Made by a program: the position numbers and the translations under genes
IMG/VR virus record: IMGVR_UViG_3300026078_000017
Location: 186,001-250,000 of that record
Direction: 5' to 3' (one strand)
DNA: 64,000 nt
Part shown: one piece after another, positions 21,235 to 35,286 of the stretch
Layout: each line of letters begins with the position of its first letter
Numbering within the stretch: the first letter of the stretch is position 1
Notes under the pieces: model-generated
Seen by the model: only the letters and a program-made list of their open reading frames with translations
Database searches by the model: none
Told to the model about the DNA's origin: nothing

Positions 21235-22413
21235 TTACACTACGCTTCCCAAAACCGCATCATAAGCTGTGGAAATTGCTTGAAAAGAGTGTGTTTTCAA
21301 CAATTTACCCTGAAGCTCCTCAGCCCACTGTTTTGGAATGGTCGAGTTTTCATAGAACTTGAGGACACGCTTCTTGAAGTCTTCCTCGTCAGCAATGCCC
21401 CATTGAGAGCCTGGCATCCAGATTTCATTGTCAAAACGACCTGGAGGAACTGCTCCTACCTTGGTATCAACCTTGATGTACTTGCCTTGACCCAGGAACT
21501 CTGTGTGAGCTGACCAACCAGAGGCAATCACTGGAACACCGCTTGCTGCCGCCTCTAAAATCGGTAAACCGAATCCTTCACCATGGGTGAGGGTTACTAG
21601 CGCCTTGATGGAAGGGTGCTTATAGAGCCTTACAACCTCCTCGTCGTTCATTTCCCCGTGAAGAAGATAAAGTTTTGGATTTGTGCCTTTGTTGACTTGG
21701 CTAAGAAGACCCGTCAACTGTTGCTTGCACAAGAACTCATCTGCCTTGGTGTAACGACCCATGTTGGTCTTCAGAACAATGCCAACGTCTGGCTTGTCTG
21801 CAAAGACCTCAAACAGCCACTTGAGCGTAAATGGAAGGTTCTTTCGGTCGGTAGCTGCGTCACCACCCGTGATCTGACCAAATACCAAGAAGTTAAATGC
21901 CGTGTCGGTTTTGAAGTCAAGAGGCTCAACTGTGGAAGACTCTAGAATCTTGTCAAAGAAAGCCTCGGGAACAACAACGATTGGGGTTGTGACCTTTCCA
22001 GAGTTCATGAACACAGACTTGGTAAACTCAGAAGGAACAATAACCAAGGTCATCTTGTTTACGTGTTCAATCCACTTTGGATTACAGCGGTCTGCCTCTA
22101 CGCCTGCCGTCATACCAATATTTACCTTACCAAGTTCAGGACACCACTCATTTGGGAGCTGGAGTTGGATTGTCACATCATAAAGCTTCTTTTGCTTTTG
22201 GGTGGCACTTGCCTGAAAACAACGACCAATCAGGTCATTCTGGGCATAGGTGTCAACATACCAAGGAGTACCTCCCCAGTTCAAAAGTTCTGTCGTAATG
22301 TCCAAGTTGCCATTCTTGTCGGCACGGTCAAACAACCACCTTGCAACTTGTCTTGCGTGAACTCCATAACCACTCTGTGAAAGAAGTGGCGCTCTCAGAA
22401 GAACTGTTTTCAT
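21235..22413 (-). CDS. Glycosyltransferase, GT4/GT-B fold
   Basis: SGYGVHAR N-terminus; HGEGFGLPILEAAASGVPVIASGW (EX7E) motif. Confidence 0.85.
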   Translation of the reverse strand: MKTVLLRAPLLSQSGYGVHARQVARWLFDRADKNGNLDITTELLNWGGTPWYVDTYAQNDLIGRCFQASATQKQKKLYDVTIQLQLPNEWCPELGKVNIGMTAGVEADRCNPKWIEHVNKMTLVIVPSEFTKSVFMNSGKVTTPIVVVPEAFFDKILESSTVEPLDFKTDTAFNFLVFGQITGGDAATDRKNLPFTLKWLFEVFADKPDVGIVLKTNMGRYTKADEFLCKQQLTGLLSQVNKGTNPKLYLLHGEMNDEEVVRLYKHPSIKALVTLTHGEGFGLPILEAAASGVPVIASGWSAHTEFLGQGKYIKVDTKVGAVPPGRFDNEIWMPGSQWGIADEEDFKKRVLKFYENSTIPKQWAEELQGKLLKTHSFQAISTAYDAVLGSVV

Positions 22414-23852
22414 TTTGCGCTTGCCTTTGTGATTTTGATGTTTTTCATCAAGTGAGCCGTAATGTCCATTGGAAGTTTTGCAACACTTGGGTCAATTTTA
22501 ATTTGCTTCTGTTCAAAGAGCTGTTGAGTAGCTTCCTGTTGATTCTTTGGTTGTGGATTTGGATTATCGATGAGAGAAAGACTCCAAGTCTTTGGTTTGT
22601 TTGCCTTGTACTTGAGGATTGTGTCTTCAAGGGTTCTATCCCAGTCAGCAACCATCTTCTCATAAGAGAACTCAAAGTTCGTGTACTCAAGTAGCTTCTG
22701 CTTCATAGCTACTTTCTCTTCTGGTGTGTACTCGTAAACCTTCATGAAGGCATCCACAACCTGTTGGTGATTTGTGAAGTCTTCATAAATGTATGGAACC
22801 ATCTGAGAACCAACGAGCTGTTGACTTGCTGGTGGAATGGCTACTCCGTTTTCTGAGCCGTCTCTGTGATCAATGACCTGACGAGTCAAACCACCAGTGG
22901 TAAGAGCAATGATTGGCTTACCAACCATCATCTGAATCAAGGTAGACAAACCAAAACCTTCAGCCTTGGCAATGTTGATTAGAACGTCAGACATGTTGTG
23001 AACGATGTTCATGTCACTTGGATTAAGCTTTTCTGTGGAGAACATCAGGTGCTCTCTAAGACCATAGAGATTGCTTACCTCAGCCAAGTTGCCGCCTTCG
23101 ACGTCAAATGGATCTGTGTGCATAATCATCATGGCTTTTCTGTGTCCATGCTTTTTTTCAAGAGCATCAAGGAACTCACTGAAGCATGCAATGACATCAG
23201 AGCCCATTTTACGATGAGCATTTCGGTTAACCCACAAGACCTTGAACCAGTCAGCCTTGTCTCCGAACTTGCCAGTATTGAACTCCGTCATCTTTTCTTC
23301 AGGAAGTGGATAGTAGATTTCCTTTGGAAAGCTGTGAGGAATGTAGTTCGTCTTCTCAGGGAAATGAGGCTGAACTAACTCATATGTCTTATATGCAAGA
23401 CAGTTGATGAGGTCAGTTGAGTTGTACCAAATCTCATTGAACTTTGGATATGGACCATTATCCCACACGTGCCAGTAAACAAGTGGAGCGAGTTGATGAA
23501 TTTCATCCAAGACTTCCCAGGTCCAAATGAACTGACGTGGATCAGTAAACAAGAACACAGCATCTGGACGCTCTGACAACAAGATCTGACGAAGTTGTTC
23601 CTTCGTACCAAAACCATCAACTGGTTTGATGATCATGTCAGGATGTGGTTGAGATACACGATAATCGGAGTGCTTCTGTGCACCACCCAAACAAACAAAC
23701 TTGTACTTGCCGGTATTGAGTAGACCATTGAACAATGCGCCAGCCTGGACGCCTACACCTGAGGTAGACAAAGGATGATCGCAAAGCGTTAAAATCTTGA
23801 ACTTCTTTTTGGGAAGTTGTGCCTGTATGTCGCTTGGGTTAAATCCGGTCAT
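22410..23852 (-). CDS. Glycosyltransferase, GT4/GT-B fold
   Basis: SGVG N-terminus; NRNAHRK; AEGFGLSTLIQMMVGKPII motif. Confidence 0.85.
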   Translation of the reverse strand: MTGFNPSDIQAQLPKKKFKILTLCDHPLSTSGVGVQAGALFNGLLNTGKYKFVCLGGAQKHSDYRVSQPHPDMIIKPVDGFGTKEQLRQILLSERPDAVFLFTDPRQFIWTWEVLDEIHQLAPLVYWHVWDNGPYPKFNEIWYNSTDLINCLAYKTYELVQPHFPEKTNYIPHSFPKEIYYPLPEEKMTEFNTGKFGDKADWFKVLWVNRNAHRKMGSDVIACFSEFLDALEKKHGHRKAMMIMHTDPFDVEGGNLAEVSNLYGLREHLMFSTEKLNPSDMNIVHNMSDVLINIAKAEGFGLSTLIQMMVGKPIIALTTGGLTRQVIDHRDGSENGVAIPPASQQLVGSQMVPYIYEDFTNHQQVVDAFMKVYEYTPEEKVAMKQKLLEYTNFEFSYEKMVADWDRTLEDTILKYKANKPKTWSLSLIDNPNPQPKNQQEATQQLFEQKQIKIDPSVAKLPMDITAHLMKNIKITKASAK

Positions 23853-25855
23853 TTCTTTGTTTCCATTTCAAGTAACAATGTACGCTGTCTATCGCTCGTT
23901 ACTGTGTCTTTCATTAAGTTCATCAAGTCATCTTGATACATTATTTTGGCAAGTTCCTTGAACTTTACTTTTGGTTCCCAACCAAGAATGTTTCTTGCTT
24001 TTGTTGGGTCGCTTTCAAGATGCGTAACTTCATGAGGTCTGAGTTGTTGTGGGTCGAACACTACGTATTTTTCCCAATCTAGCCCTGCTTGTTCAAAAAC
24101 TGCAATTACAAACTCTTTTACAGAGTGACTTTCTCCTGTGCCAATAACGAAGTCATCTGGAACATCATGTTGAAGCATTTTCCACATGCACTCCACGTAC
24201 TCTCTGGAGAAACCCCAGTCACGCTTGGCGTCAAGGTTACCCAGAAGAAGCTTGTCTTGTTTACCCAAGGTAATGTTTGCTACAGCCTTTGTAATCTTTC
24301 TTGTTACGAAGTTTTCGCCACGTCTTGGAGATTCATGATTATGTAAAATACCAACGGCAATGAACATTTTGTATGCCTCACGATAGTTCACACAAATATT
24401 ATGTGCAGCTACCTTGGCACAAGCATAAGGACTTGCTGGCATGAAAGCGGTCTGTTCATTCTGAGGATGTTGGGGATTGAAACCAAACTGCTCAGAAGAA
24501 CCAGCCTGATAAATACGGGTATGAGGAATCAAAACCTTTGCTGCGTTGAGAAGTCTGAGGGTTCCCATGGCAACAACATCAAATGTCTCTTCAGGACAGT
24601 CAAAGCTGACTCTTACATGAGACTGAGCTGCTAGATTGTAAATCTCATCAGGCTTGTATTCTTCCAAAATCTTCCACAGGGAACTTGAATCCTGCATGTT
24701 TCCATAAACAGAAATGAAGTTTGGATGTTCGATTATGTTCTTCATCCATGGGTGCATGCTTTGGGAGTTTCGACGAAACATACCAACAACGACGTAGTTC
24801 TTCAAAAGTAAGAACTCAGCAAGGTAGCTTCCATCTTGACCAGCCACTCCAGTGATTAAGGCGACTTTACGGTGAGTGTCTTCTTTTTTCATGTTTGGAT
24901 TTTTATTCTGGGTTTCCAAGAAGAAATCATAAGCATTTTTTAATGAATCTTCGAAGGTAATTTTAGGCTTCCAACCCAATTTTGTCTGTCTTGACACATC
25001 CGAAAGTTTTTGAAACATTCCATCAGGTCTTGAGGTGTTGAAGGCAAACTTGATTTTTTGTTCAGAACCTACCTTGGTTTCCCCAGTAAGAACCTCAACA
25101 GCCTTTTCATAGATTTCCTTGATACTCAGGTCATATCCAGTAGACACGTTCATGATGTCTGGAACTTCATCGAACTTATCCAAGGAGAAAAAGATAAAAT
25201 CTGCTAAGTCAGCAGCATCCATGAACTCTCTTCTTGGTGTGCCAGTTCCCCAAATCTCAATATAAGTGTCAGACTGTGTTTCCAGTCTTATCTTGGCCTC
25301 ATGAACCTTACGAATGATGGCTGGAAGAAGATGGCTTGCTTCAGGGTCAAAGTGATCCCATCTACCAAACAAGTTGCAAGGAATATAGGTTTTATATGAG
25401 ACACCCTTTTCTTCAGAAGCATACTGACAGGCTCTTTGAACTGCATTTTTAGCAATCGCGTAACCTTCATTGGTTGGCTCAAGAGGACCAGTGAACAGAT
25501 ACGACTCCTTCATTGGCTGTTGAGCCTCACGTGGATACATGCAGGTAGAACCAAGATTAATCATCTTGGATACCCCGAGCTGTTTTGCAGCTCTTACCAC
25601 ATTCAAACCCATGGTGATGTTATCCATCATGAAATTGAACATGTTGGTTTTGTTGGCCTGAATGCCACCAACCAAGCCAGCCGTGTGAATGATGAGGTCT
25701 GGCTTGGTAATGTCTATTGTCTCAACAACTTGAGCAAAGTTCAACAAGTCGAGGTCCTTGCGTGAGGGAGCAATGATTTCGTGTTGTTGAGCTGCTGGAT
25801 GTTCTAGGATATTTCTTCCTACCATTCCAGTGCCACCAGTTAAAAGGATCTTCAT
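23849..25855 (-). CDS. fcl-gmd: Fused GDP-L-fucose synthase (Fcl/GMER, about aa 1-315) and GDP-mannose 4,6-dehydratase (Gmd, aa 322-668)
   Basis: Two Rossmann motifs (TGGTGMVG; ITGVAGQDGSYLAE). Fcl motifs STCMYP, YAIAK, WGTGTPRREF; Gmd motifs NLAAQSHV, SSEQFG, SPYACAK, NHESPRRGENFVTRKI. Confidence 0.92.
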   Translation of the reverse strand: MKILLTGGTGMVGRNILEHPAAQQHEIIAPSRKDLDLLNFAQVVETIDITKPDLIIHTAGLVGGIQANKTNMFNFMMDNITMGLNVVRAAKQLGVSKMINLGSTCMYPREAQQPMKESYLFTGPLEPTNEGYAIAKNAVQRACQYASEEKGVSYKTYIPCNLFGRWDHFDPEASHLLPAIIRKVHEAKIRLETQSDTYIEIWGTGTPRREFMDAADLADFIFFSLDKFDEVPDIMNVSTGYDLSIKEIYEKAVEVLTGETKVGSEQKIKFAFNTSRPDGMFQKLSDVSRQTKLGWKPKITFEDSLKNAYDFFLETQNKNPNMKKEDTHRKVALITGVAGQDGSYLAEFLLLKNYVVVGMFRRNSQSMHPWMKNIIEHPNFISVYGNMQDSSSLWKILEEYKPDEIYNLAAQSHVRVSFDCPEETFDVVAMGTLRLLNAAKVLIPHTRIYQAGSSEQFGFNPQHPQNEQTAFMPASPYACAKVAAHNICVNYREAYKMFIAVGILHNHESPRRGENFVTRKITKAVANITLGKQDKLLLGNLDAKRDWGFSREYVECMWKMLQHDVPDDFVIGTGESHSVKEFVIAVFEQAGLDWEKYVVFDPQQLRPHEVTHLESDPTKARNILGWEPKVKFKELAKIMYQDDLMNLMKDTVTSDRQRTLLLEMETKK

Positions 25856-26538
25856 TTTCTTACCTTAAAGACTCCATAACTGACACAGTCATTGTAGACT
25901 GGGCTATAAAGTAATGATTTGTCTGCGTTTTGCTTCATTACAACTGCATCACATGGTTCAAACAAGTCAAAGGCATCAAGAGTAAAGTCTGTCATGCCAT
26001 ATGAGGTATTTTGATCCTCTGTCTTTAGGCCAGCTCGGTTTCTGGCTCTTTCAAGTTCATTCCATGGAAGACATGACTGGTCATAGTGATCCCAGTACTC
26101 ATCCAAGGTAATAACCATTTTTCCACCTGGACGAAGAACTCTGTGCATTTCCTTCAAAATCTTCTTGAAGAGGTCAAAGTTATCAATGTGTTCAAATGTA
26201 GAAATGGCGTAAACTAAGTCGATGGAGTTATCTGGCATCTGAAGGTTCGATGCATCCATCCACAAGACTTTATGGTTTGGAGTATTGATTTCTTCATTCT
26301 TGATTCGAGAGTCGAAGTCAAATCCAAGGTAGGATTTCGGCTTTAGGTTGTCTCTAACGAACTCATGCCAGTTGTGCTCTGAAGGTAAACCAGTTCCAAA
26401 GTCAATAACGTCCAATCCTTCTACAGGCTCTACAAAAGCAGCCCACATGTACTCATAAGGTCTGGAACCCCAGTTTCCAAAACGAATGCCAGGCAACTGT
26501 GGGTCTGAGGTTTTAAAGTATCCAAATTTTTTCATCAC
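25852..26538 (-). CDS. Class I SAM-dependent methyltransferase
   Basis: VIDFGTG motif I; DASNL..PDNSIDLVYAISTFEHI; RVLRPGGKMVIT. Confidence 0.85.
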   Translation of the reverse strand: MMKKFGYFKTSDPQLPGIRFGNWGSRPYEYMWAAFVEPVEGLDVIDFGTGLPSEHNWHEFVRDNLKPKSYLGFDFDSRIKNEEINTPNHKVLWMDASNLQMPDNSIDLVYAISTFEHIDNFDLFKKILKEMHRVLRPGGKMVITLDEYWDHYDQSCLPWNELERARNRAGLKTEDQNTSYGMTDFTLDAFDLFEPCDAVVMKQNADKSLLYSPVYNDCVSYGVFKVRK

Positions 26539-27473
26539 AACACCTTCAGGATATTATTGATTCGATTCACGAAAGTGTGTTTGTCCTTGACCTTTTGAAC
26601 CAATTCTCTTAGCGTTTGGGGATCTGGGTTTTCTTCCCACAGTTTTGCCTTAAGGTACATTTCTGCTGTGTCAGGAGAATATGGAAGCTTTTGGTCAAAC
26701 AAATCCCACACCGTCTGAGAGTTGGTTGCCGTCATACGACCAAAGGATAGGTTTTTAAAGACACGACAAGGCACATAGCCCTTGTCTACTTGCCAGGACC
26801 CCTGAAGGGCTGGGGCTATCCAGGACTCGGCTATAGCACGAGGCTGGAGGTCATTCTGGAGCTTGGCATGAATAAGTTGGACTCCATCACCCTTGGCTGC
26901 CTGAGCCAAGTCTTGAATTTTGTCATCATTCCTGTGAGGACCACCCATGATGCTACCAATCCAAAAGATTTGCTTGCGACGTTTGTGTTGCATGGCAATC
27001 GTGTGGTCTGGGTCTATTTCACTTGGAAGCAGATTTGTTGCCCATGGTTGGTAAAGAGTTCTGTTGTCACACCCGTGATCAGGTCTGGAATAATCCGGAT
27101 CTTTTTGATAATAGGCGAGCTGTTCAAGGTCAACAGGAACAACATTTCTTGTCAAACAGTCATGAGTGTAAACCTGAAGGTTCAAGACGTTCGGAAGAAT
27201 AGGGCGATACTTGTCCAGGTTGCAGTTATGAATGACGTACTTGCTTGACGCAACAATTGGAATGTTTTGATCAACCTGTCCTTCAGTGAGGAACAGGCAA
27301 TTCTCAAAAGAAAGACCAGAGACATCATCGGAGTTGTCCAGCCATAAAACCTCATATCCCATGTAGTTGAAGGTTCGATACCAGGAGTCATGAATAAAAG
27401 CAAAAGTGTTTGCCGTTCTAGCATCCAGGAGTTTATGACCCCAAACAACTACCTTGTTAAATTTTTCTGTCAT
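26535..27473 (-). CDS. Putative glycosyltransferase (CgeB-like GT-B)
   Basis: IFWIGS and YVPCRVFKNLSFG resemble CgeB-type RxFE motifs; cluster context. Confidence 0.5.
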   Translation of the reverse strand: MTEKFNKVVVWGHKLLDARTANTFAFIHDSWYRTFNYMGYEVLWLDNSDDVSGLSFENCLFLTEGQVDQNIPIVASSKYVIHNCNLDKYRPILPNVLNLQVYTHDCLTRNVVPVDLEQLAYYQKDPDYSRPDHGCDNRTLYQPWATNLLPSEIDPDHTIAMQHKRRKQIFWIGSIMGGPHRNDDKIQDLAQAAKGDGVQLIHAKLQNDLQPRAIAESWIAPALQGSWQVDKGYVPCRVFKNLSFGRMTATNSQTVWDLFDQKLPYSPDTAEMYLKAKLWEENPDPQTLRELVQKVKDKHTFVNRINNILKVL

Positions 27474-28479
27474 ACGTTTCCTTTTCTAAAAACTGATCAA
27501 GCCTTCTGGAAAGTTCTTCATAGGAGATGACAACATCTTTAGAGGAATAGTCCTTAAAAGGACCAGAAGCCTTCTGACGTGACCAGGACTCCCTGATGCA
27601 ATATGCAAAGCCATAGTCTTCCTTCTTTATGTCCTCAAGTTCGTTCATCATGATTTCATGAATCTTTTCTCCAGGACGAATACCAATGATTTTAGTAGGC
27701 TTGTTGAACTTCTTGCTAAAATATGTGGCAAGGTCTTCAACCTTGAATGAGTCGAGTTTTGGAACCCACATAGAACCTGAAGTGCCATAGGCAAGAGCCA
27801 TGTCAATAAGCTTAACCGACTCCTCCAGAAGCATCATGAACCTTGTCATGTTCGGATCTGTAATGGTAAAGGCTTCAGCCTCCTTGGCTTGCTTTAAAAA
27901 CAAGGGAACGATACTTCCTCTTGAGGAGATAACATTTCCATATCTTGTAACCATGTAGGCAACCGAACTTTTTGCAGCCGTAGCAATAACCAGTTTCTCA
28001 GAAATGCTCTTACACATGCCATATACGTTAATCGGATTGCATGCCTTGTCGGTTGACACAAAACAAACTCTGGTGATTTTATTGTCTGGACGTATGGAGT
28101 TTTCCTCAATGGCATCCAGTACGTTTCTAACGCCAATTACGTTTGTGTCGATTGACTCACTTGGTTGATTCTCGCAAGTATCTACCTGTTTCAAAGCCTG
28201 TGCAATAATGACATAAGTTGGGTTCTCTTGACGAATAACCTGACTTACACGACGTGGATCACGAACATCACAAATAATCGTGCTTATTTTCTTGCGGCTG
28301 TTTAACGGAGGAAACTTGTTCTTGAGTTCCCAGTGCTTTGCTTCATCCCTGGAAACCACAACAATGTCAGAAATATATTGCCTGTAAAAGGAAACAAGGG
28401 CTTGTCCCAAAGAACCAGCCCCTCCAAAAATCAACAACTTCTTGTCAGTTAAGTTACTTACGTGTTGCATTTGCCCCAT
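27457..28479 (-). CDS. UDP-GlcNAc 4,6-dehydratase (inverting; PseB/FnlA/CapE family)
   Basis: GGAGSLG, SRDEAK, ALKQV..CE, STDKACNPINVYG.CK, RYGNVISSRGSIVPLF, TRF, GIRPGEKIHE; no N-terminal TM domain. Confidence 0.88.
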   Translation of the reverse strand: MGQMQHVSNLTDKKLLIFGGAGSLGQALVSFYRQYISDIVVVSRDEAKHWELKNKFPPLNSRKKISTIICDVRDPRRVSQVIRQENPTYVIIAQALKQVDTCENQPSESIDTNVIGVRNVLDAIEENSIRPDNKITRVCFVSTDKACNPINVYGMCKSISEKLVIATAAKSSVAYMVTRYGNVISSRGSIVPLFLKQAKEAEAFTITDPNMTRFMMLLEESVKLIDMALAYGTSGSMWVPKLDSFKVEDLATYFSKKFNKPTKIIGIRPGEKIHEIMMNELEDIKKEDYGFAYCIRESWSRQKASGPFKDYSSKDVVISYEELSRRLDQFLEKETYDRKI

Positions 28480-29342
28480 CCGAAGTAAGTGTCTATCGGA
28501 ATCTGGAAGTTGTGTTCCTTGGCTTTTATGAATTGATCCATTTTAATTCCCCTGATTTCCTCGGGCATTATTGTCCTGGAAATGAAGTCTGCCACGAAGT
28601 CAGTCTTGGCTTGGTGATGTTGTTGACTCTGATGATCCCAGTTACTGGACCTACAATAGTGCAAGAAGGCATTTCCAAAGAACTCAAGGTTCCACTCAGG
28701 ATTGTATGAACCAACAATCTCATCAGGAAGACAATGCATGTTTTTGTTTTCTGGCTTGATATGCCAGGTGTTGTGCATGGTTCTTACTGCGGCTTTCACC
28801 TCAGGATGCTTCTCAAAATACAAGTGAAGTCCACCACCCGTGTCAAGACGAGTGTTGTTAATTCCAATACCTTCCCAGTCAATCGTCTCAGCCTCTGGCA
28901 ACAGCTCAGGATTTGCCATCACAATCACAGGTGTGAGATAGTGGTAAATGTGATCTCTCTGTTGTTTACACCCACCAAAGGTTCCTGTGTCTCCAAGAAA
29001 CTCATTGACGGAAAATGGAGCAACCATAAAGCAGTCGCCATCAAGGAACATCACATAGGAATCCTTGTGTTTACACATGTCAGAACGCCAAACCATGTTC
29101 AAGGAATCGGCATGATGTTTTCCTGCCAGGTGAAAGGGTGTATCTGAGTGAGTCTGGATTGTAAAAAGCCCAGCAGCTTCTGCTGTTGTATTAATAGCAT
29201 CTCTCAAACTCTGTTCTCTGGCATTATTGATGATGGTGAAGTCAAAAGGGTCTTTTAGGTGCTTTTGAAGGGTCATCAACTGCCATCTGATAAACTCAGG
29301 ACGATTGTAGTGAACAGCATATACATGTACAGGTTTAGTCAT
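28458..29342 (-). CDS. Putative GT-A fold glycosyltransferase
   Basis: VHYNRPEFI...TIINNA...MFLDGDCF (DxD) pattern. Confidence 0.55.
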   Translation of the reverse strand: MTKPVHVYAVHYNRPEFIRWQLMTLQKHLKDPFDFTIINNAREQSLRDAINTTAEAAGLFTIQTHSDTPFHLAGKHHADSLNMVWRSDMCKHKDSYVMFLDGDCFMVAPFSVNEFLGDTGTFGGCKQQRDHIYHYLTPVIVMANPELLPEAETIDWEGIGINNTRLDTGGGLHLYFEKHPEVKAAVRTMHNTWHIKPENKNMHCLPDEIVGSYNPEWNLEFFGNAFLHYCRSSNWDHQSQQHHQAKTDFVADFISRTIMPEEIRGIKMDQFIKAKEHNFQIPIDTYFGWGKCNT

Positions 29343-30189
29343 TTTCTTTCATCCACTCTCTCAGTTCACAAAGTTGATCACAAATGTTTGGTGCTTCTCC
29401 ATTGCTAGGCAACAGAGCACGATTGACTGCTTTTGGAGCTTTAACATTTTCAACCAAAGGATTTTTCCACTCATTACAAAACACGTTGCTAATGTTAACC
29501 AGAAGATCATATTTTGTTATTGGTGCACTTGCTAGTTGTACGAGCATTCCTGGTGGAAGAGTTAGCAATTGACTTTTGTTGAAAATAAATCTCTCAAGGT
29601 ATTGAGCCAAATATAAAGTTGTTACACCAGACCAAATATGGTTGTTAAATCCTGGAACGCTTTGTTTTGGACTGTTCCTAAACCACTCAAACAAACCATG
29701 TTCAGTGTCGGCCGGACCAATGATGCTTGTCCTTACCACGATAGTGTCTGATGGTTCTCCAAGAGCCTTAGAAATACCATAGTCATCATCTGCGTCCTTT
29801 GGTGCTGAGGCGATATATCGTTCACCTGGTTTGAGGTCGCCCTTAAACACACAGTCACTTGAAATGTGAATTAGTTTGACATTAGCCTTTTTACAAGCCA
29901 ATGCCAGCTTCCATGGAAATACAGCATTAACCTCATAAAAGTCTGAGGACTTCAATCCTTCTTTTTGCTTGATGTTTCCAATGCAGTTAATGACAAAGTC
30001 ATAACCTTCAAAACTTGGTAGCAAGTCCGACTTCACGTCAAACTTGATAACTCCCACAGCTTTTCTTGTAGGCATCCAAGAAGGAATTTTGTCTCGAACA
30101 GTAAAGGTAACATTGTGATCTTTAGAAATCAAATACCTAACAACCACACTGCCCAACATCCCTGTGCCGCCGAGTACCAATACTTTCAT
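29335..30189 (-). CDS. RmlD-like NDP-sugar 4-keto reductase (SDR)
   Basis: LGGTGMLG, VINCIG, HISSDCVF, YGISKALGE (YxxxK), RTSIIG, WSGVTT. Confidence 0.85.
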   Translation of the reverse strand: MKVLVLGGTGMLGSVVVRYLISKDHNVTFTVRDKIPSWMPTRKAVGVIKFDVKSDLLPSFEGYDFVINCIGNIKQKEGLKSSDFYEVNAVFPWKLALACKKANVKLIHISSDCVFKGDLKPGERYIASAPKDADDDYGISKALGEPSDTIVVRTSIIGPADTEHGLFEWFRNSPKQSVPGFNNHIWSGVTTLYLAQYLERFIFNKSQLLTLPPGMLVQLASAPITKYDLLVNISNVFCNEWKNPLVENVKAPKAVNRALLPSNGEAPNICDQLCELREWMKEND

Positions 30190-30875
30190 GTTCTCATTTC
30201 CTTGTGGTTTTTATCAAGAGCCAAGAGTCTCTTCTGAAATGGAAGAGACCAGGACTCAGGATAACAGTAAGAAGGCGACAAGGACAAAGTAGGAGGATTA
30301 TCGATAAAATACCTGTTCATGTGAGACTCATCATGCCAAACGGCTATGATATTTTTGGCTTTATCTTCCAAAACACGACTACCAATGGTTTCACACATCT
30401 TCAGGTATTCTTTAGCAGAACCTCCATTGAATCCACCAGCATAATACACAGTGCCCTCTGAAGGCGCTACAAAGGCTTTGGAGACACGATTGGTCTCATA
30501 GGTGAATGCCTCCCTTGGCTTGTTGAAAAAGCCCGGGTGGATGGTTCCTACGCGGTCTGAGAGCACTTCATCCCCAACCGTGTCCACAAACAACATGTCG
30601 GCATCACAATAAAAGAGATAATCCATCTCTTCTAGTTGCTTCTTTGTCGAAGGCATGGTGAACACATTATACCGAAATAAGGTTGGTCCCGGCCAAGCCA
30701 TATGGATTTGTGGGATAATAACCTGACCAGGTTCTGGTGTGATGCCATGTTTGTTTGTGAAGACAAACATAGTAACCTCATGTTTGGTCAAAAAATGCTT
30801 TTTAACCGACTCCCATAAAGGTGGTACAAAGTCATAGTATTTATTTGTGGCAATAACCAACAGTCCAATTTTCAC
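30186..30875 (-). CDS. GT6 family glycosyltransferase (ABO-like alpha-1,3-GalNAc/Gal transferase)
   Basis: IATNKY, WP..TL.RY, YLFYCDAD, HPGF, YYAGGFNGG, WHDESHMNRYF: the full GT6 motif set. Confidence 0.9.
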   Translation of the reverse strand: MKIGLLVIATNKYYDFVPPLWESVKKHFLTKHEVTMFVFTNKHGITPEPGQVIIPQIHMAWPGPTLFRYNVFTMPSTKKQLEEMDYLFYCDADMLFVDTVGDEVLSDRVGTIHPGFFNKPREAFTYETNRVSKAFVAPSEGTVYYAGGFNGGSAKEYLKMCETIGSRVLEDKAKNIIAVWHDESHMNRYFIDNPPTLSLSPSYCYPESWSLPFQKRLLALDKNHKEMRT

Positions 30876-30879: not shown

Positions 30880-31482
30880 TTACTCCTTGAGCTTCATGAA
30901 CAAGACAACTTCCTTTGGGTTCACACGAACCCAAGTAAATGAAGTGACCTTTGGGTTCTGGCTCAAGAAGTTCTCAATATCTTGCTTGTTGTAGCGGTTA
31001 TGGAAAAGTTGATCTGGCTCAAAGAAGTCAATCTTCTCTGGTTCATCTGTTGGCTCAATGAAGAAAATGTTGATGGCTTCTTTTTGTCCAATACGAATCA
31101 TCTCTCCAAGACACTCACGAAACGTAGGAAGATGTTCAAGAACGTGGCGAGAGAAAGCAACCTCAAAGGATGAGTCTGGAAGTGAAATCTCCTCAACTGG
31201 AGAATGAAGCGCAGGAACTCCTTGAGAGGTAATGTGGCTATACAAAACCCAGGAAGAGTCAACTCCCATGTAGGAGATCTCATATCCATCATTCTTGTAG
31301 CCAAAATACTCAGTGGCTGGTCCGCATCCAAGATCTACAAGAGACTTATAGCCTGCATTTTTGACATAGTTTCTTACGAAAACCTTGGACTCTGCGTTGA
31401 AGTCACCAATCCAGCTCTTAAACTCACCGAATTTCTGACCAACGTTCTTGTCCCACCATGTTTGATTAAATCTCTCAGTCAT
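30880..31482 (-). CDS. Class I SAM-dependent methyltransferase
   Basis: LVDLGCGP, MGVDSS, LPDSSFEVAFSRHVLEHL. Start moved to ATG 31482. Confidence 0.85.
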   Translation of the reverse strand: MTERFNQTWWDKNVGQKFGEFKSWIGDFNAESKVFVRNYVKNAGYKSLVDLGCGPATEYFGYKNDGYEISYMGVDSSWVLYSHITSQGVPALHSPVEEISLPDSSFEVAFSRHVLEHLPTFRECLGEMIRIGQKEAINIFFIEPTDEPEKIDFFEPDQLFHNRYNKQDIENFLSQNPKVTSFTWVRVNPKEVVLFMKLKE

Positions 31483-31882
31483 TGTCCCACATTTCCTTCT
31501 CGTAAGAATACTTCTTGGCAATCCACTCTTTGTAAAAATGATGTCCTATGTCTAGAGACACATAGTTGTCTCCTTGCATGCCTTGCTCAGAGTAGTCTAC
31601 ATCGTTACAAGCTTTCTTAGAAAATCCTTTTTTGGCTAGGAACTTATGAAACTCCTGTAGCCACAAGCCATCCGTGTAAATCAGTCCATGTTTATCTGGA
31701 TTCCAGGAACTCTTGTAAAAGTAAACCTTGAGTTCTCCCCAGGGCTTCTGTACAGGTCCATCCCAGGATTCGAAAATAAATCTGGCTCTGGCATCACGCA
31801 TCTTGACTTTTCTGTACTCATTTGACCACAACCCATTGCCGGCTGTTTGAATAAGCTTGTTTATTGCCAGATGTTTTTTCAT
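31475..31882 (-). CDS. Hypothetical phage protein (135 aa)
   Basis: GELKVYF...W...GLIYTD...YSEQGMQGDNYVS pattern that I recall from large-phage hypotheticals; not a sugar enzyme. Confidence 0.6.
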   Translation of the reverse strand: MKKHLAINKLIQTAGNGLWSNEYRKVKMRDARARFIFESWDGPVQKPWGELKVYFYKSSWNPDKHGLIYTDGLWLQEFHKFLAKKGFSKKACNDVDYSEQGMQGDNYVSLDIGHHFYKEWIAKKYSYEKEMWDND

Positions 31883-31883: not shown

Positions 31884-32606
31884 TTACTTACCTGCTGTTT
31901 GTTGGAGGGCTGCCTTCATTGAGATACAGCAAAGTTGAGGAATCCGTGGGTCATACTTCGGATTATGAGAAACGTTATATTCAACCAGCATCTCATCCAG
32001 GTTTGCAAAATTAAACCAAGAAACACACTTAAGCCATAAGTGATAGTCTTCTGCTACTGGATAGGTGTTGTCGTATCCACCAGTTCTCAAGACAACTTCC
32101 GGGCGAAACACCACAGAAGGGTGGGCAAGGGCATTGTGACCAAGGAGTAGCGTTTTCTTTATTTCTGCATTTTCCTTGGGATAAGTCATCTGACTATTCA
32201 AAACGACTTTGGTCCCTGTGGAATAGTCGACTCTTAGGATTTGAGTACCACAAATATGAACGTCAGGATTTTCTGTCATGAACTTGACTTGTTTTTGGAG
32301 TTTGGTTGGTTCCCAAACGTCATCAGCATCAAGTCGAGCAATCAAGTCTGAACTTGCTTCCCCAAGAATCGTAAAGAGTCCTTTGTTCAAGGCAGGAACG
32401 ATTCCAGGTTCCTTGCAAGAAAGCAAGGTCCAATCTTGACCAGCCTCATCCATAAGGTCACTAACGATTTTTACGGTATTGTCCGTGCAGTTGTTGTCAA
32501 CCAACACAAGACGATAGACTCTATAAGTCTGAACTAATAAAGATCTAATTGCTCTTTCAATGGTTTTCTCACCATTGAACACAGGAAGCAAAACCGCTAC
32601 TTTCAT
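31884..32606 (-). CDS. GT2 glycosyltransferase
   Basis: LLPVFNGEKTIERAIRSL, VDNNCTD, IARLDADD, HPSVVFR, EDYHLW. Confidence 0.9.
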   Translation of the reverse strand: MKVAVLLPVFNGEKTIERAIRSLLVQTYRVYRLVLVDNNCTDNTVKIVSDLMDEAGQDWTLLSCKEPGIVPALNKGLFTILGEASSDLIARLDADDVWEPTKLQKQVKFMTENPDVHICGTQILRVDYSTGTKVVLNSQMTYPKENAEIKKTLLLGHNALAHPSVVFRPEVVLRTGGYDNTYPVAEDYHLWLKCVSWFNFANLDEMLVEYNVSHNPKYDPRIPQLCCISMKAALQQTAGK

Positions 32607-32609: not shown

Positions 32610-33416
32610 TCACCTCTTTACAAAAGTCAAAGGTACTAGTTGATGAGCCGACTTGTTCTTGATTCTTTGGAATGTTTTAATGTCAATCTTCTTGCCTTCA
32701 TTCCACAAGCTAAGCAAGTCTCCTTCAGAACCTCCACCAAACACGTTCTTTACTTCAGACTGCACACGGTTATGGGGAACGTTGAAAACTCTCGATACCG
32801 TGAAACAAGCCATCTGTGGATGAGGAATCTGATTGTGAAGGTGAGACATGTTTCCTTCAAAGGTATTTGGGGATTTCCAGTCACCACTGTTGTTCATGGC
32901 AAACAAGGCGTCTGTCCTACGAAACACGTGCCCATCTACGGACAAAGGGTAATTCCAGTCCCAGTCTGTACCCTTCCAGTTCCACACAAAGAATGGTTCT
33001 TTGGTTACGCCTGCATGTGGAACACTCTGTCTTGATTGTGTGGAATAACAAAAATCTAGGTGCTTGCCAAGTCTGAGACTAAAGCAAAACACTGGAAGGT
33101 TGCCTCCAAGAAATCTTGTTATCAGGTCAAAATCCACATTATCCTTAAACACGTCATCGTCTGTGAAGTACACGACATGTTCCTTGGCTCCATTCACAAG
33201 ACCCATGGTTTGTGTGCGAAAGTCAAACTCAGGATGAAAGTTCACTTTTGGGAAAGCCTGTTTCGCCTGTTCCATAGGCCAAATATACTCGTGGTCAGCC
33301 TTGTAAAGGACATTCACATCTGTAGGATCCATGTTCGAGTTATAAAACATGGACTCCAACAGAGCAAACAACTGCATTGGTCTGTTTTTAGAAAACACAA
33401 TTGCGGTAATGTTCAT
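32610..33416 (-). CDS. Putative GT-A fold glycosyltransferase
   Basis: FSKNRPMQL, YFTDDD, YPLSVDGHVFR; cluster context. Confidence 0.55.
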   Translation of the reverse strand: MNITAIVFSKNRPMQLFALLESMFYNSNMDPTDVNVLYKADHEYIWPMEQAKQAFPKVNFHPEFDFRTQTMGLVNGAKEHVVYFTDDDVFKDNVDFDLITRFLGGNLPVFCFSLRLGKHLDFCYSTQSRQSVPHAGVTKEPFFVWNWKGTDWDWNYPLSVDGHVFRRTDALFAMNNSGDWKSPNTFEGNMSHLHNQIPHPQMACFTVSRVFNVPHNRVQSEVKNVFGGGSEGDLLSLWNEGKKIDIKTFQRIKNKSAHQLVPLTFVKR

Positions 33417-34414
33417 AGTGGATGTTTCTCGCACCAGTCTTTCATGATTTCAGGTGCGTTTCTCAAAATCTTGACAGAAGGAGTTGTGGAACCATCCCAA
33501 GGACTGTGGAAAATCCATCCGCCAGTCTTGTCGCGAAGTTCCTTTGCCTTGGCTTCAATCATCTCATCCGTAACCTGTTCCCAGGGAACATCAAAGAAGA
33601 CATTCGAGGAACGATTGATGTCATTATACATTGACTTCCAGAAATCCCCAAAGAAGTGCTTATACTTCTCAATCTTGCCCTTGATGCTGTACCAGGAATA
33701 GTGATACACCGTTGGCAAACCAAAACTCATTTGATTATACCATTTTTCATAGGCTTCAAGAGCCTTAGGATCTTTTAGGGCTGCCATTCTCAAGGACTCA
33801 AGTTGACTATTCATGAAGTTCAAACTTGGAACCGGAAGTCCTTGTTCTTTATTGATATAGTCACAGGTGTCCGTTCCTGGCTTTGCATAAACTAGTCCGT
33901 TGACAACCTGACGATGTGTAACCGGCATACCATGAGTAATGCCTGGGTGATTGCGACTTACACGCCACTTCCATGGGTTGATGTCCACACGAACTTTGTC
34001 TGGACCGCCCCAAAACTCCACAACTGGCAAGCACAACAGAGGAACATCCTCAAGGTTTTTTGCTTGAACAATCAAGTTATCCAAAATAGGTCTGTCAGAG
34101 GCATGAACGACTTCATCACAGTCCATCTGCCAAAGATAGTCGCCTGTACACTTCTCACGAGCTGCTTGCTTGAGCACACCATCATACACTCCGTGGTTTG
34201 GAGCATTCCAGTCCATGTCGGCATAATAAACAAAGAGCTTACCTTTGTTGGCTGCCATCATGTCTGCGAGAACTTTTCTCGTGTCATCGGTTCCGTCCGA
34301 GGAGTCCATTACAACGACTTCATCACAGAAGTCGATAAGAGACTGAATGGACTCCCTAAAAGGGTAATCCATGGCAATGCAGTTACGAGTGGTTGTATAT
34401 CCAGATAGTTTCAT
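33413..34414 (-). CDS. GT2-like glycosyltransferase
   Basis: YPFRESIQSL..FCDEVVVMD...DDT, KQAAREKC, WQMDCDEV (DxD). Confidence 0.75.
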   Translation of the reverse strand: MKLSGYTTTRNCIAMDYPFRESIQSLIDFCDEVVVMDSSDGTDDTRKVLADMMAANKGKLFVYYADMDWNAPNHGVYDGVLKQAAREKCTGDYLWQMDCDEVVHASDRPILDNLIVQAKNLEDVPLLCLPVVEFWGGPDKVRVDINPWKWRVSRNHPGITHGMPVTHRQVVNGLVYAKPGTDTCDYINKEQGLPVPSLNFMNSQLESLRMAALKDPKALEAYEKWYNQMSFGLPTVYHYSWYSIKGKIEKYKHFFGDFWKSMYNDINRSSNVFFDVPWEQVTDEMIEAKAKELRDKTGGWIFHSPWDGSTTPSVKILRNAPEIMKDWCEKHPL

Positions 34415-34422
34415 TTGATTCC

Positions 34423-35286
34423 TTACTTGCAATGTTCAGTCATGTAATATGGACAATACTTGCATGAGTTTCTATTTTTGGTGAAAATCTTCTTTTCGAC
34501 AGACCCAACCATTCTGTAGATGTTCTCCATTGCCTTTTCGATTGCCTTCTCACCAACCGACACAGGCACGAACTCGATGTGCTCACCTGGCTTTGCTGTT
34601 CTCTTGAGAAGAACCCAGGCACATCTAACCTTTTCGATTGGAACATTATTCTTGGCACACCAGAAGTGCTTGTAAAGCACAAGCTGCATCTGTTTCATTT
34701 GGTCACGCTTCTTGTCCCCAGTCCAACCCCAGTCGGTTGTCTTCCAGTCAATAATCCAATATTGCTGTTCAATCTCTGGTTCCTTCTTACGCTTGTCGAC
34801 CTTCTCACACTCAAGGACACAGTCAATAAAGCCCTTGAAGTAGCGGTTCTTCTTTTTTTCTAGACTTTCGAACAAGTCGTACTCAGCAGCAATGATCTTG
34901 TAGTTCTGAAAGTTCTCCTGAAGAAATCCTGGAAGTTCCTCAAAAATAGGCTTGACTGTGGCAGCCCACACAGCAGGGTCATCCTTGAACTCAGGGATTG
35001 CCTTGAGAACCTCAATGACCTTCTCGCCTGTGACAACAGGGTCTAGTGGAGCCTTGCCAAGCAAATACTGCTCAATGGCATCATGGAGCGTTCCACCAAA
35101 CTCTGTGTGTTGGGTTGGCTTGTCCTCCCCAAGTTTATCGATGTGCTTCAACTTGTGACGAAAGGAACACTCGAACCAATCTGTGAACTCGGAATAGGAC
35201 ACATGCCACTTCAACGTTGGAAGTGGGTTGCCCTCAAAGATCATTGGTAACTTGATTTTTTCTTGTTCTTCTGTTATTTCAGACAT
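34423..35286 (-). CDS. PD-(D/E)XK exonuclease (RecB/Cas4-like, probable Fe-S)
   Basis: SYSEF...C, G..LH..IE, E..L, GFID, IIDWKT, Q...Y, C-terminal CKYCPY...C. Confidence 0.85.
   Translation of the reverse strand: MSEITEEQEKIKLPMIFEGNPLPTLKWHVSYSEFTDWFECSFRHKLKHIDKLGEDKPTQHTEFGGTLHDAIEQYLLGKAPLDPVVTGEKVIEVLKAIPEFKDDPAVWAATVKPIFEELPGFLQENFQNYKIIAAEYDLFESLEKKKNRYFKGFIDCVLECEKVDKRKKEPEIEQQYWIIDWKTTDWGWTGDKKRDQMKQMQLVLYKHFWCAKNNVPIEKVRCAWVLLKRTAKPGEHIEFVPVSVGEKAIEKAMENIYRMVGSVEKKIFTKNRNSCKYCPYYMTEHCK

What the first reader, a model, noticed from the sequence alone, without database searches (positions are those of the whole stretch)
30186..30875. ABO-type GT6 with blood-group-A-like donor signature next to GDP-fucose synthesis
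Seen: YYAGGFNGG, WHDESHMNRY and a DAD metal motif. Known: human GTA has YYLGGFFGG and GTB YYMGAFFGG at the donor-determining positions; small residues there (as in Bacteroides BoGT6a) favour UDP-GalNAc. Many bacterial GT6s have NXN, whereas cyanophage P-SSM2 GT6 keeps DXD. GT6 acceptors are typically alpha-1,2-fucosylated. Inference: the phage may build an A-antigen-like GalNAc(a1-3)[Fuc(a1-2)] epitope; no GT11 is recognisable here, so one of the unassigned GTs could be a new fucosyltransferase.
Basis: partly seen in the sequence, partly recalled or inferred. Interest (0 to 1): 0.65.

Follow-up and report, generated by a model that had tools for sequence, protein, structure and literature searches.

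The report
Phage blood-group-type glycosyltransferase with unusual partner
A giant soil phage carries a relative of the human ABO blood-group enzyme inside a 14-gene sugar-building cluster; the usual fucose-adding partner enzyme is missing, and an unnamed enzyme family sits in its place, making that family a testable candidate for a new fucosyltransferase.

Summary
Window 30186-30875(-) is a 229-aa GT6 glycosyltransferase (Pfam 1.6e-50; BoGT6a 2.4e-57; human GTA 5e-45). It has DAD, YYAGGFNGG and WHDES, plus the fucose-accommodating His113, Gly115 and Ala219. These residues are nearly invariant across the closest 120 homologues, so they are a clade trait. The clade is the known "minimal, DXD" GT6 group (cyanophage P-SSM2, Parachlamydia PaGT6).

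The host genome is a 320-kb T4-like jumbo phage from a rhizosphere metagenome, with no sign of being a cyanophage. The gene sits in a conserved 14-gene, all-soluble cluster that includes a fused GDP-fucose synthase/GMD.

No GT11 exists in the record. Across 160 GT6 loci (80 viral, 80 cellular):
- GT11 lies nearby in 83.
- A homologue of the unassigned ORF 32610-33434 lies nearby in 43.
- Both occur together in none, with at least 9 switches on the GT6 tree.

The ORF's model resembles inverting GT-A enzymes. A sister contig with the same backbone carries GT11 instead. Donor, acceptor and glycan target remain untested.

The parts
30186..30875 (-). GT6 glycosyltransferase, 229 aa: a minimal catalytic domain with no membrane or BHB domain. 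Motifs: DXD = D91-A-D93 (nt 30597-30605); donor loop Y144-Y-A146-G-G148-F-N-G-G (nt 30420-30446); W180-H-D-E183 (nt 30309-30338); His113-Pro-Gly115, Ala219, Lys222.
32610..33434 (-). Unassigned GT-A glycosyltransferase (268-274 aa; DDD motif at residues 92-94 of the 274-aa ORF). Candidate substitute for GT11, i.e. candidate inverting alpha-1,2-fucosyltransferase.
   Evidence: No Pfam, NCBIfam, PHROG or PDB sequence hit. AF2 model pLDDT 90; nearest solved folds are inverting GT-A enzymes. Mutually exclusive with GT11 beside GT6. Natural fusion to the next gene's orthologue in P0264.
31884..32606 (-). GT2-family glycosyltransferase, 240 aa. Best solved relative is the GT2 fucosyltransferase WrtF, but WrtF's fucose pocket is not kept. 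Possibly the transferase that lays down the Gal acceptor.
33413..34432 (-). Weak GT2-like protein, 339 aa; first gene of the cluster.
31475..31882 (-). 135-aa protein of unknown function.
30880..31521 (-). SAM-dependent methyltransferase immediately upstream of GT6. The same MTase-GT6 order is seen in P-SSM2 and ACG-2014f.
29335..30189 (-). Short-chain dehydrogenase, RmlD-like 4-reductase, 284 aa. Its start overlaps the GT6 stop.
28458..29342 (-). Unassigned viral GT-A/GT2-like protein, 294 aa (DGD motif).
27457..28479 (-). UDP-GlcNAc 4,6-dehydratase of the PseB/FnlA/CapE type.
26535..27473 (-). GT-B fold glycosyltransferase, 312 aa, from an unnamed family.
25852..26538 (-). SAM-dependent methyltransferase.
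23849..25855 (-). Fused GDP-L-fucose synthase (residues 1-325) and GDP-mannose 4,6-dehydratase (residues 330-668).
22410..23852 (-). GT4-type (GT-B, retaining) glycosyltransferase, 480 aa.
21235..22413 (-). GT4-type glycosyltransferase, 392 aa; last gene of the cluster, followed by baseplate/fibre genes.

Best explanation
ORF 30186-30875(-) encodes a soluble, metal-dependent (DXD) retaining alpha-1,3-glycosyltransferase of CAZy family GT6. It belongs to the 'minimal catalytic domain' clade typified by cyanophage P-SSM2 and Parachlamydia PaGT6. By its active-site residues it most likely transfers GalNAc from host-supplied UDP-GalNAc to O3 of a galactose that already carries an alpha-1,2-fucose, giving an A-antigen-like GalNAc-a1,3-(Fuc-a1,2)-Gal cap. 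It works inside a 14-gene, 13-kb cluster (21235-34432, minus strand) of a T4-like jumbo phage. That cluster also makes GDP-L-fucose (fused Fcl-GMD) and a UDP-6-deoxy-HexNAc, and it encodes about eight glycosyltransferases and two methyltransferases, all without membrane segments. The canonical fucosyltransferase (GT11) is absent. Its step is most likely done by the unassigned inverting-type GT-A enzyme 32610-33434, possibly after the adjacent GT2 (31884-32606) has added the galactose. Shown: family membership, motifs, cluster composition and conservation, absence of GT11, and the GT11/32610 complementarity. Inferred: donor, acceptor, linkage, the fucosyltransferase role of 32610, and the target of the glycan. 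The target may be a virion or other cytoplasmic phage protein, or a host lipid-linked glycan intermediate.
For: Family membership and catalytic residues. The characterised enzymes with the same donor loop (BoGT6a, AGGL) or from the same clade (PaGT6, with DXD) use UDP-GalNAc plus 2'-fucosyllactose, and PaGT6 needs metal (PMC3516806 and PMC3961637). GT6 is tied to fucosylation in phages: GT11 lies on the same strand in 64 of 64 GT11-bearing loci (of 80 viral loci), with a median gap of 1.3 kb and overlapping stop/start in B23 and S-CAM9. GMD or Fcl is present in 41 of 80. GDP-fucose synthesis in the window. GT11 is absent from the 320-kb record and from 13 related records, one of them 92% complete. 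Complementarity of GT11 and 32610 homologues: 83 loci with GT11, 43 with 32610, 0 with both, 34 with neither; Fisher p=4e-18, not corrected for phylogeny; at least 9 switches on a 173-sequence tree and at least 2 forced by well-supported branches on the 88-sequence tree. The 32610 homologue is often directly upstream of GT6. Contig L023 has the same backbone with GT11 where this phage has 32610. GT6 active-site residues are the same in both locus types. The 32610 model matches inverting GT-A enzymes (GT13, GT16, GT2), as an alpha-L-fucoside made from GDP-beta-L-fucose requires. A natural fusion joins a 32610 homologue to the GT2 orthologue. The cluster is conserved in related jumbo-phage contigs.
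Against: No activity data exist for any phage GT6 of this clade. The donor loop is AGGF, which is neither exactly BoGT6a's AGGL nor GTA's LGGF. No UDP-GlcNAc 4-epimerase is present in the phage record. The 32610 family is broader than the GT6 pairing: in 80 viral loci of that family only 15 have GT6, and 9 have a GT11 without GT6, so family members need not share one specificity. Its nearest solved folds use UDP or TDP sugars, not GDP-fucose. Complementarity shows alternation, not identity of reaction; 32610 could add a different 2-O substituent. The record is only 81% complete.
Confidence: 0.55

Rival explanations
1. The GT6 is genuine but does not make an A-like epitope. It uses another donor (UDP-Gal, giving a B-like or alpha-Gal cap, or a 6-deoxy analogue) and/or a galactose whose O2 carries something other than fucose, added by 32610. 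Fucose would then enter the glycan elsewhere through the GT2 or a GT4 enzyme.
For: The specificity is inferred from only a few residues. The 32610 fold neighbours are UDP-GlcNAc and TDP-Rha enzymes. GT4 genes lie directly downstream of Fcl-GMD. GT6 overlaps an RmlD-like reductase gene. No GalE-type epimerase is in the phage.
Against: Ala146 and Gly148 match the GalNAc-type pattern that mutagenesis showed to be decisive in BoGT6a, alpha3GalT and GTA/GTB (PMC3516806). His113, Gly115 and Ala219 match fucose-accepting enzymes. The GT6 pocket residues are the same whether the partner is GT11 or 32610. The dehydratase is nearest the inverting CapE/FnlA/PseB type, whose products are L-sugars unsuited to GT6. 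GT4 enzymes are retaining and would give beta-L-fucosides.
Confidence: 0.25
2. The missing alpha-1,2-fucosyltransferase is the GT2 enzyme 31884-32606 (WrtF-like), not 32610-33434. In that case 32610 would do a neighbouring step, such as adding the galactose.
For: The best solved relative of the GT2 is WrtF, a GT2 GDP-fucose fucosyltransferase (E=5e-9, aligned over the whole GT-A domain). Pro8, Phe10, Gly and Ile of the nucleotide pocket are kept, and the guanine-binding Asp66 is Glu here. GT2 enzymes are inverting. The GT2 is fused to a 32610 homologue in P0264.
Against: WrtF's fucose-pocket residues Gly89 and Val87 are Asp and Arg here, giving a normal DxDD motif. GT2 homologues occur together with GT11 in 22 of 34 loci, including a true orthologue next to GT11 in L023, so the GT2 is not what alternates with GT11.
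Confidence: 0.15
3. Alternative view of the target: the cluster remodels a host surface glycan (LPS O-antigen, capsule or S-layer glycan) during infection, as proposed for the P-SSM2 'LPS genes', rather than decorating phage particles.
For: Sullivan et al. 2005 proposed this for the homologous P-SSM2 cluster (PMC1079782). The cellular homologues of GT6 sit in bacterial genomes. BoGT6a-type enzymes build surface antigens.
Against: None of the 14 proteins has a membrane segment. The 320-kb record has no initiating phosphoglycosyl transferase (PF02397, PF00953) and no Wzy_C polymerase or ligase. The cluster lies directly upstream of baseplate and fibre genes on the same strand. A strictly lytic jumbo phage gains little from changing the surface of a dying cell. 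None of this is decisive, because host machinery could be used.
Confidence: 0.35
4. The glycosyltransferases hypermodify phage DNA bases with a glycan.
For: The cluster lies next to the Prim-Pol, PD-(D/E)XK nuclease and IMPDH/GMP-reductase genes. The GT-B 26535 has weak structural similarity to T4 alpha- and beta-glucosyltransferases (TM about 0.5). Phage DNA glycan clusters with epimerases are known (bioRxiv 10.1101/2023.12.21.572611).
Against: No thymidylate-synthase-like hydroxymethylase and no TET/JBP dioxygenase is in the record. GT6, GT11 and GDP-fucose genes are not part of the known DNA-glycosylation pathways. The same GT6 modules occur in bacterial chromosomes.
Confidence: 0.03

Closest known systems
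Cyanophage P-SSM2 GT6 (PSSM2_268) and its 'LPS' gene cluster
   Same: 47% identical, same length, DXD motif, identical YYAGGFNGG donor loop, Ala at the fucose-accommodating position, and a methyltransferase immediately upstream. GMD and Fcl are in the same cluster.
   Different: P-SSM2 has a GT11 three genes upstream of GT6; this phage has none and carries the 32610 GT-A instead. P-SSM2 has Tyr where this protein has Gly115. The rest of the two clusters is not detectably homologous. P-SSM2 is a marine cyanophage, whereas this is a roughly 400-kb rhizosphere phage without psbA.
Parachlamydia acanthamoebae PaGT6 (characterised; PMC3516806)
   Same: Same clade by published description: minimal catalytic domain, DXD, no BHB domain. 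Close relatives of the phage protein (44-58% identity) are in Parachlamydiales, other Chlamydiae and Dependentiae genomes. PaGT6 uses UDP-GalNAc plus 2'-fucosyllactose and needs Mg2+ or Mn2+.
Bacteroides ovatus BoGT6a (PDB 4AYJ/4AYL/4CJ8)
   Same: Best solved relative (E=2.4e-57, aligned end to end). Shares His122/Gly124/Thr134/Tyr153/Trp189/Glu192/Lys231 equivalents and the AGG donor loop.
   Different: BoGT6a has NAN instead of DAD and is metal-independent. It has a C-terminal membrane-binding extension. Position A7 is Ile in BoGT6a and Ala here.
Human ABO transferases GTA/GTB
   Same: E about 5e-45 over the whole catalytic domain. Shares DXD, His233, Gly235 (A-type), Gly268 (A-type), Phe269, Trp300, Glu303 and Ala at A7.
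   Different: No stem or transmembrane region. Ala replaces Leu266/Met266, and Asn replaces Phe270.
GT11-GT6 gene pairs of Synechococcus phages B23, S-CAM9, ACG-2014f
   Same: The same two-step logic, with GT11 immediately upstream of GT6 and stop/start overlap.
   Different: Those GT6s are only about 33% identical and have a different pocket (HPC, Y-x-Q-G-C, and His at A7), so probably different specificity.
Dictyostelium PgtA (GT2 beta-3-GalT fused to GT74 alpha-2-FucT)
   Same: Works alike in concept: a soluble cytoplasmic GT2 plus a non-GT11 GT-A fucosyltransferase making Fuc-a1,2-Gal. A homologue of 32610 is naturally fused to the GT2 orthologue. The nearest Atlas cluster is auto-named 'Bifunctional glycosyltransferase family'.
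   Different: Homology to GT74 could not be tested with the tools at hand; this is a lead from my own knowledge plus PMC11468063, not a result.

Membership tests
CAZy GT6 / Pfam PF03414 | Sequence match above the curated threshold over the whole catalytic domain | tested here: met
   PF03414 172 bits against a cut-off of 25, residues 2-227. Aligned 1-225 to BoGT6a 1-234. NCBIfam subfamily model NF041524 scores 214 bits, below its 250 cut-off.
CAZy GT6 / Pfam PF03414 | [quoted passage not shown] | tested here: met
   D91-A92-D93 aligns with BoGT6a N95-A-N97 and GTA D211-V-D213. Asp is invariant in 120 of 120 homologues.
CAZy GT6 / Pfam PF03414 | Catalytic Glu (GTA E303, BoGT6a E192) and conserved C-terminal Lys (alpha3GT K359, BoGT6a K231) | tested here: met
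   E183 within WHDES, and K222 within LALDKN.
CAZy GT6 / Pfam PF03414 | Retaining alpha-1,3 transfer of Gal or GalNAc | not testable with these tools
   Needs an enzyme assay.
GT6 clade 1 (P-SSM2 / PaGT6 type; PMC3516806) | Minimal catalytic domain with DXD; no BHB membrane domain and no stem or TM region | tested here: met
   229 aa ending at the catalytic domain. Maximum 19-residue hydropathy is 0.84. On the GT6 tree it falls in the same well-supported 85-sequence group as the P-SSM2 GT6, apart from the three GT11-adjacent Synechococcus-phage sequences used as outgroup. No NXN-type or vertebrate sequences were in that tree.
Blood-group-A-type specificity (GTA / BoGT6a-like) | Small residues at GTA positions 266 and 268, and Gly at 235 | tested here: met
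   Ala146, Gly148 and Gly115. The role of these positions is from PMC3516806.
Blood-group-A-type specificity (GTA / BoGT6a-like) | [quoted passage not shown] | tested here: met
   His113, Gly115 and Ala219, where alpha3GT has Gln/Trp/Trp.
Blood-group-A-type specificity (GTA / BoGT6a-like) | A GT11 alpha-1,2-fucosyltransferase that makes the H-type acceptor | tested here: not met
   No PF01531 match in the 320-kb record or in 13 related records. Profile comparisons of the two orphan families with phage GT11 give probability below 1%.
Blood-group-A-type specificity (GTA / BoGT6a-like) | Supply of UDP-GalNAc (a 4-epimerase) | tested here: inconclusive
   No GalE match above the cut-off in the phage. 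The host may supply it.
GT11 (for ORF 32610-33434) | Homology to PF01531 / the HxRRxD motif region | tested here: not met
   No Pfam hit even at E<=10. hhalign probability 0.4%. The fold is GT-A, not GT-B-like.
GT2 fucosyltransferases of the WrtF type (for ORF 31884-32606) | GAD in place of DxD, and a hydrophobic C6-methyl pocket (Val87, Gly89) | tested here: not met
   The aligned residues are Arg and Asp, giving a DADD motif. Overall similarity is E=5e-9.
GT74 (for ORF 32610-33434) | Homology to the Dictyostelium PgtA fucosyltransferase domain | not testable with these tools
   No GT74 sequence, profile or structure was reachable.

The most novel reading that the evidence does not exclude
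ORF 32610-33434 represents a large, unnamed GT-A family (over 2,200 sequence clusters in phages, Dependentiae, Chlamydiae and other bacteria). Its GT6-linked members would be alpha-1,2-fucosyltransferases unrelated to GT11. That would make a second, independently evolved route to H-type (Fuc-a1,2-Gal) acceptors, and hence to ABO-like antigens, outside animals. In this phage the resulting A-like glycan would be attached to virion proteins.
Probability: 0.3. Interest if true: 0.75.

Novelty: new variant of a known kind. Interest (0 to 1): 0.55.

Why it matters
GT6 enzymes make the ABO, alpha-Gal and Forssman antigens, and how they spread between microbes and vertebrates is an open evolutionary question. 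This work shows three things. The phage and intracellular-bacteria GT6 clade is large. It is almost always coupled to a fucosylation step. That step is carried out by one of two unrelated partners, never both. The result is a concrete, cheap test: express three small soluble proteins and assay them with GDP-Fuc and UDP-GalNAc. That could define a new fucosyltransferase family useful for making H and A type glycans. It also raises the question of what a lytic jumbo phage does with a blood-group-like glycan, whether masking virions, altering adsorption or remodelling the host.

Tried and rejected
1. GT-B ORF 26535-27473 as the fucosyltransferase. The AF2 model (pLDDT 94.7) matches Gtf3/GtfC, SenB, BGluT and T4 AGT/BGT at TM about 0.5, and no fucosyltransferase. 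hhalign against GT11 gives 0.2%. Its homologues co-occur with GT11 in 15 of 23 loci. Rejected.
2. ORF 28458-29342 as the GT11 substitute. Its homologues co-occur with GT11 in 20 of 25 loci. Rejected as the substitute; its function remains open.
3. The GT2 as a WrtF-type fucosyltransferase. The fucose pocket is not conserved. Kept only as a minor rival.
4. A cyanophage origin. No psbA is present. The nearest capsid proteins are from Flavobacterium phage immuto and Microcystis phage Mel-JY01 at about 45%, and the source is a rhizosphere metagenome. The host remains unknown.
5. DNA hypermodification. No ThyA-like or TET/JBP gene is present.
6. UDP-D-FucNAc as the GT6 donor. The dehydratase is nearest the inverting CapE/FnlA/PseB types. 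Not favoured.
7. Megablast of the 12-kb region against the phage collection found no match.
8. Link of the 32610 family to streptococcal dGT1 CgT. The solved CgT (5HEA) is only a distant fold match (TM 0.50, rank 35), so nothing can be drawn from it.
9. Tools not used. The search of protein representatives was not run because its 150-row output would be filled by close family members and could not reach GT74. Complex prediction was not run because no binding claim is made. Read laying was not run because the only holder is a DNA run kept as contigs, probably the source sample.
Full report
**Observation.** The ORF at 30186-30875 on the minus strand (GTG start, 229 aa) exists as described. It contains CDAD, YYAGGFNGG and WHDESHMNRY. 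It is an unambiguous member of glycosyltransferase family 6: Pfam PF03414 E=1.6e-50 and PHROG 3317 E=7e-57. It aligns end to end with Bacteroides ovatus BoGT6a (E=2.4e-57), human GTA/GTB (about 5e-45) and bovine alpha-1,3-GalT (about 1e-30).

In those alignments:
- D91-A-D93 falls on the DXD/NXN motif.
- A146-G-G148-F falls on BoGT6a A155GGL158 and GTA L266GGF269.
- E183 falls on the catalytic Glu.
- K222 falls on the conserved C-terminal Lys.
- His113-Pro-Gly115 and Ala219 fall on the positions that let GTA and BoGT6a accept a 2'-fucosylated galactose. Alpha3GalT has Gln, Trp and Trp there (PMC3516806).

**How special the signature is.** It is not special to this gene. The word-index search found 2,672 homologues at E<1e-10. 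In the closest 120 (at least 53% identity), Asp91, Asp93, His113, Glu183, Ala219 and Lys222 are invariant, Gly148 occurs in 117, and Ala146 and Asn150 each in 113. The protein belongs to what Thiyagarajan et al. called clade 1 of GT6: minimal catalytic domain, DXD, no membrane-binding domain. That clade is typified by cyanophage P-SSM2, marine metagenome sequences and Parachlamydia PaGT6. PaGT6 was expressed and shown to use UDP-GalNAc and 2'-fucosyllactose in a metal-dependent way. In species-representative genomes the clade is found mostly in Dependentiae/Babeliales, Chlamydiae and small uncultured Pseudomonadota genomes.

**The genome.** The window is part of a 320,479-bp IMG/VR virus record estimated to be 81% complete. 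It has a T4-type gp23 capsid gene whose nearest named relatives (about 45% identity) are Flavobacterium phage immuto and Microcystis phage Mel-JY01. It has no psbA. The only public run holding the DNA is a rhizosphere metagenome. It is a jumbo myovirus of unknown host, not evidently a cyanophage.

**The surroundings.** The GT6 lies in a run of 14 co-directional genes (21235-34432, minus strand). In transcription order they are:
- a GT2-like protein
- the unassigned GT-A 32610-33434
- a GT2
- a 135-aa ORF
- a methyltransferase
- GT6
- an RmlD-like reductase
- the unassigned GT-A-like 28458-29342
- a PseB/FnlA/CapE-type UDP-GlcNAc 4,6-dehydratase
- the GT-B 26535-27473
- a second methyltransferase
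- a fused GDP-L-fucose synthase/GDP-mannose dehydratase
- two GT4 enzymes

Baseplate-J-like and Laminin-G fibre genes follow. Prim-Pol, an IMPDH/GMP-reductase-family gene and a PD-(D/E)XK nuclease precede the cluster.

None of the 14 proteins has a membrane segment. The record has no initiating phosphoglycosyl transferase, no WecA/MraY type enzyme and no Wzy_C ligase or polymerase. The whole cluster is conserved, gene for gene, in other jumbo-phage contigs at 40-86% protein identity. One variable slot follows the reductase; one relative has a PIG-L deacetylase and a formyltransferase there.

**GT6 and fucosylation in phages.** In P-SSM2, B23, S-CAM9 and ACG-2014f, a Pfam-significant GT11 lies next to GT6. 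It overlaps GT6's start in B23 and S-CAM9, and is separated only by a methyltransferase and a small ORF in the other two. P-SSM2 also has GMD and Fcl in the same cluster.

I fetched the best 80 IMG/VR loci encoding this GT6 clade and scanned their six-frame ORFs. I used an HMM built from the four phage GT11s and searched with the window's cluster proteins. GT11 is within 10 kb in 64 of 80 loci, always on the same strand, with a median gap of 1.3 kb. GMD or Fcl is present at strict score in 41 of 80.

**The missing GT11.** This phage has none. There was no candidate in a six-frame PF01531 search of the record.

In the 80 viral loci:
- Nine lack GT11 but contain a homologue of ORF 32610-33434.
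- No locus has both.
- Of the seven with neither, most are truncated beside GT6. One full-length case has its GT11 13 kb away, just outside the flank.

Pfam's own GT11 model finds nothing in the whole records of 13 such '32610-type' contigs, one of them 332 kb and 92% complete.

In 80 cellular loci the split is 19 with GT11, 34 with 32610, none with both and 27 with neither.

Pooled, the counts are 83 / 43 / 0 / 34. Fisher p=4e-18, which is not corrected for relatedness. On a FastTree of 173 GT6 sequences the GT11/32610 state changes at least 9 times. On an IQ-TREE of 88 viral sequences it changes 5 times, at least 2 forced by well-supported branches.

Further points:
- The 32610 homologue usually lies just upstream of GT6 on the same strand, sometimes with overlapping stop and start, mirroring the GT11-GT6 arrangement.
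- Contig L023 shares this phage's backbone (GT2-like, GT2 orthologue, GT6, both GT4s and the downstream structural gene). It has GT11 between GT2 and GT6 and no 32610 homologue.
- The GT6 pocket residues do not differ between the two kinds of locus.
GT2 homologues do so in 22 of 34.

**What 32610-33434 is.** It has no Pfam, NCBIfam, PHROG or PDB sequence match, and its 2,229 homologues are unnamed. An AlphaFold model built from 11 homologues (pLDDT 90.3) has a GT-A fold. Its nearest solved relatives are inverting enzymes: POMGNT1 and GnT-I (GT13), GnT-II (GT16), and TarP, SpsA and RmlT (GT2).

Inversion is what an alpha-L-fucoside made from GDP-beta-L-fucose requires. This follows from established glycosyltransferase chemistry, but it does not identify the donor. 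The family is unrelated to GT11 (hhalign 0.4%). One homologue (P0264, 520 aa) is a natural fusion of this domain to the orthologue of the adjacent GT2, which suggests consecutive steps.

The arrangement recalls Dictyostelium PgtA (GT2 beta-3-GalT plus GT74 alpha-2-FucT). I could not test homology to GT74, so that remains a lead. A caution: the family is wider than the GT6 pairing. Of 80 viral loci of the family, 15 have GT6, none of those with GT11, and 9 have a GT11 but no GT6.

**Other candidates.** The GT2's best solved relative is the GT2 fucosyltransferase WrtF (E=5e-9). However, WrtF's fucose-pocket residues Gly89 and Val87 are Asp and Arg here. The GT-B 26535 (model pLDDT 94.7) resembles Gtf3/GtfC, SenB and T4 glucosyltransferases only at TM about 0.5, and shows no relation to GT11.

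**Most likely mechanism.** The phage makes GDP-L-fucose and a UDP-6-deoxy-HexNAc itself. It builds a methylated hetero-oligosaccharide with soluble enzymes in the cytoplasm. Within it, the most probable order is:
1. The GT2 adds a galactose.
2. 32610 adds alpha-1,2-fucose.
3. The GT6 caps the galactose with alpha-1,3-GalNAc from host UDP-GalNAc, using Mn2+ or Mg2+ through DAD.

No phage 4-epimerase was found. The family membership, motifs, cluster make-up, absence of GT11 and the complementarity pattern are shown. Donor, acceptor, order of steps and the carrier of the glycan are inferred.

**The carrier.** Two observations favour phage proteins as the target: the absence of any lipid-carrier or export gene, and the position beside tail genes. 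The host-surface remodelling idea proposed for P-SSM2 (PMC1079782) is not excluded. DNA glycosylation is unlikely, since no hydroxymethylase or TET/JBP gene is present.

**Verdict.** The GT6 itself is a new member of a known clade, and its 'A-like' signature is ordinary for that clade. What is new is the partner: an unnamed GT-A family that alternates with GT11 beside GT6 in phages and intracellular bacteria.

Noticed in passing
window 23849-25855 (-); L004 16509-19474: GDP-fucose synthase and GMD are fused into one 668-aa ORF here, with Fcl N-terminal. In relative L004 they are separate genes. There the GMD carries a LAGLIDADG intein, as do the IMPDH-family gene and the GT2-like first gene of the cluster.
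   Followed up: partly
window 35583-36632 (-): An IMPDH/GMP-reductase-family gene (349 aa, no CBS insert) is conserved just upstream of the glycan cluster in all relatives. It might feed guanine nucleotides for GDP-sugar synthesis, or it might be ordinary nucleotide metabolism.
   Followed up: no
G000:C1 121485-123400 (outside the window): The gp23-type major capsid ORF is 638-654 aa. Matches to known capsid proteins cover only about 64% of it, in two pieces, which suggests a large insertion domain.
   Followed up: no
window 36619-37092 (-): A 157-aa ORF whose N-terminus matches the first roughly 45 positions of the Gp23 Pfam model (E=1.7e-8). This is a small protein with a capsid-prodomain-like start; L005 has the same feature.
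   Followed up: no
L003 11507-12933: In a 326-kb relative, a PIG-L deacetylase and a formyltransferase are inserted after the reductase. This suggests that lineage makes an N-formylated rather than N-acetylated 6-deoxy-amino sugar.
   Followed up: no
P0264 (520 aa, 39-kb contig): A natural fusion of the 32610-type GT-A domain to the orthologue of the adjacent GT2 gene, in the same order as the two separate genes in the window.
   Followed up: partly
L177-L256 (cellular GT6 loci): The phage-type DXD GT6 clade is concentrated in obligate intracellular or symbiotic lineages (Dependentiae/Babeliales, Parachlamydiales, Simkaniaceae, Rhabdochlamydiaceae and roughly 1-Mb Pseudomonadota MAGs). Some cellular copies carry N-terminal hydrophobic leaders that the phage copies lack.
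   Followed up: partly
L010, L011, L012 (Synechococcus phages B23, S-CAM9, ACG-2014f): Their GT11-adjacent GT6s have a different pocket (HPC, Y-x-Q-G-C-x-W-G-G, and His at the A7 position), so they probably have a different donor or acceptor from the P-SSM2 type. ACG-2014f also has a galactose-3-O-sulfotransferase-like gene in the cluster.
   Followed up: no
window 10390-13836 (-): An 1148-aa putative fibre protein with a concanavalin-A-like/Laminin_G_3 lectin domain lies downstream of the glycan cluster. It is a possible glycan-binding or glycosylated tail component.
   Followed up: no
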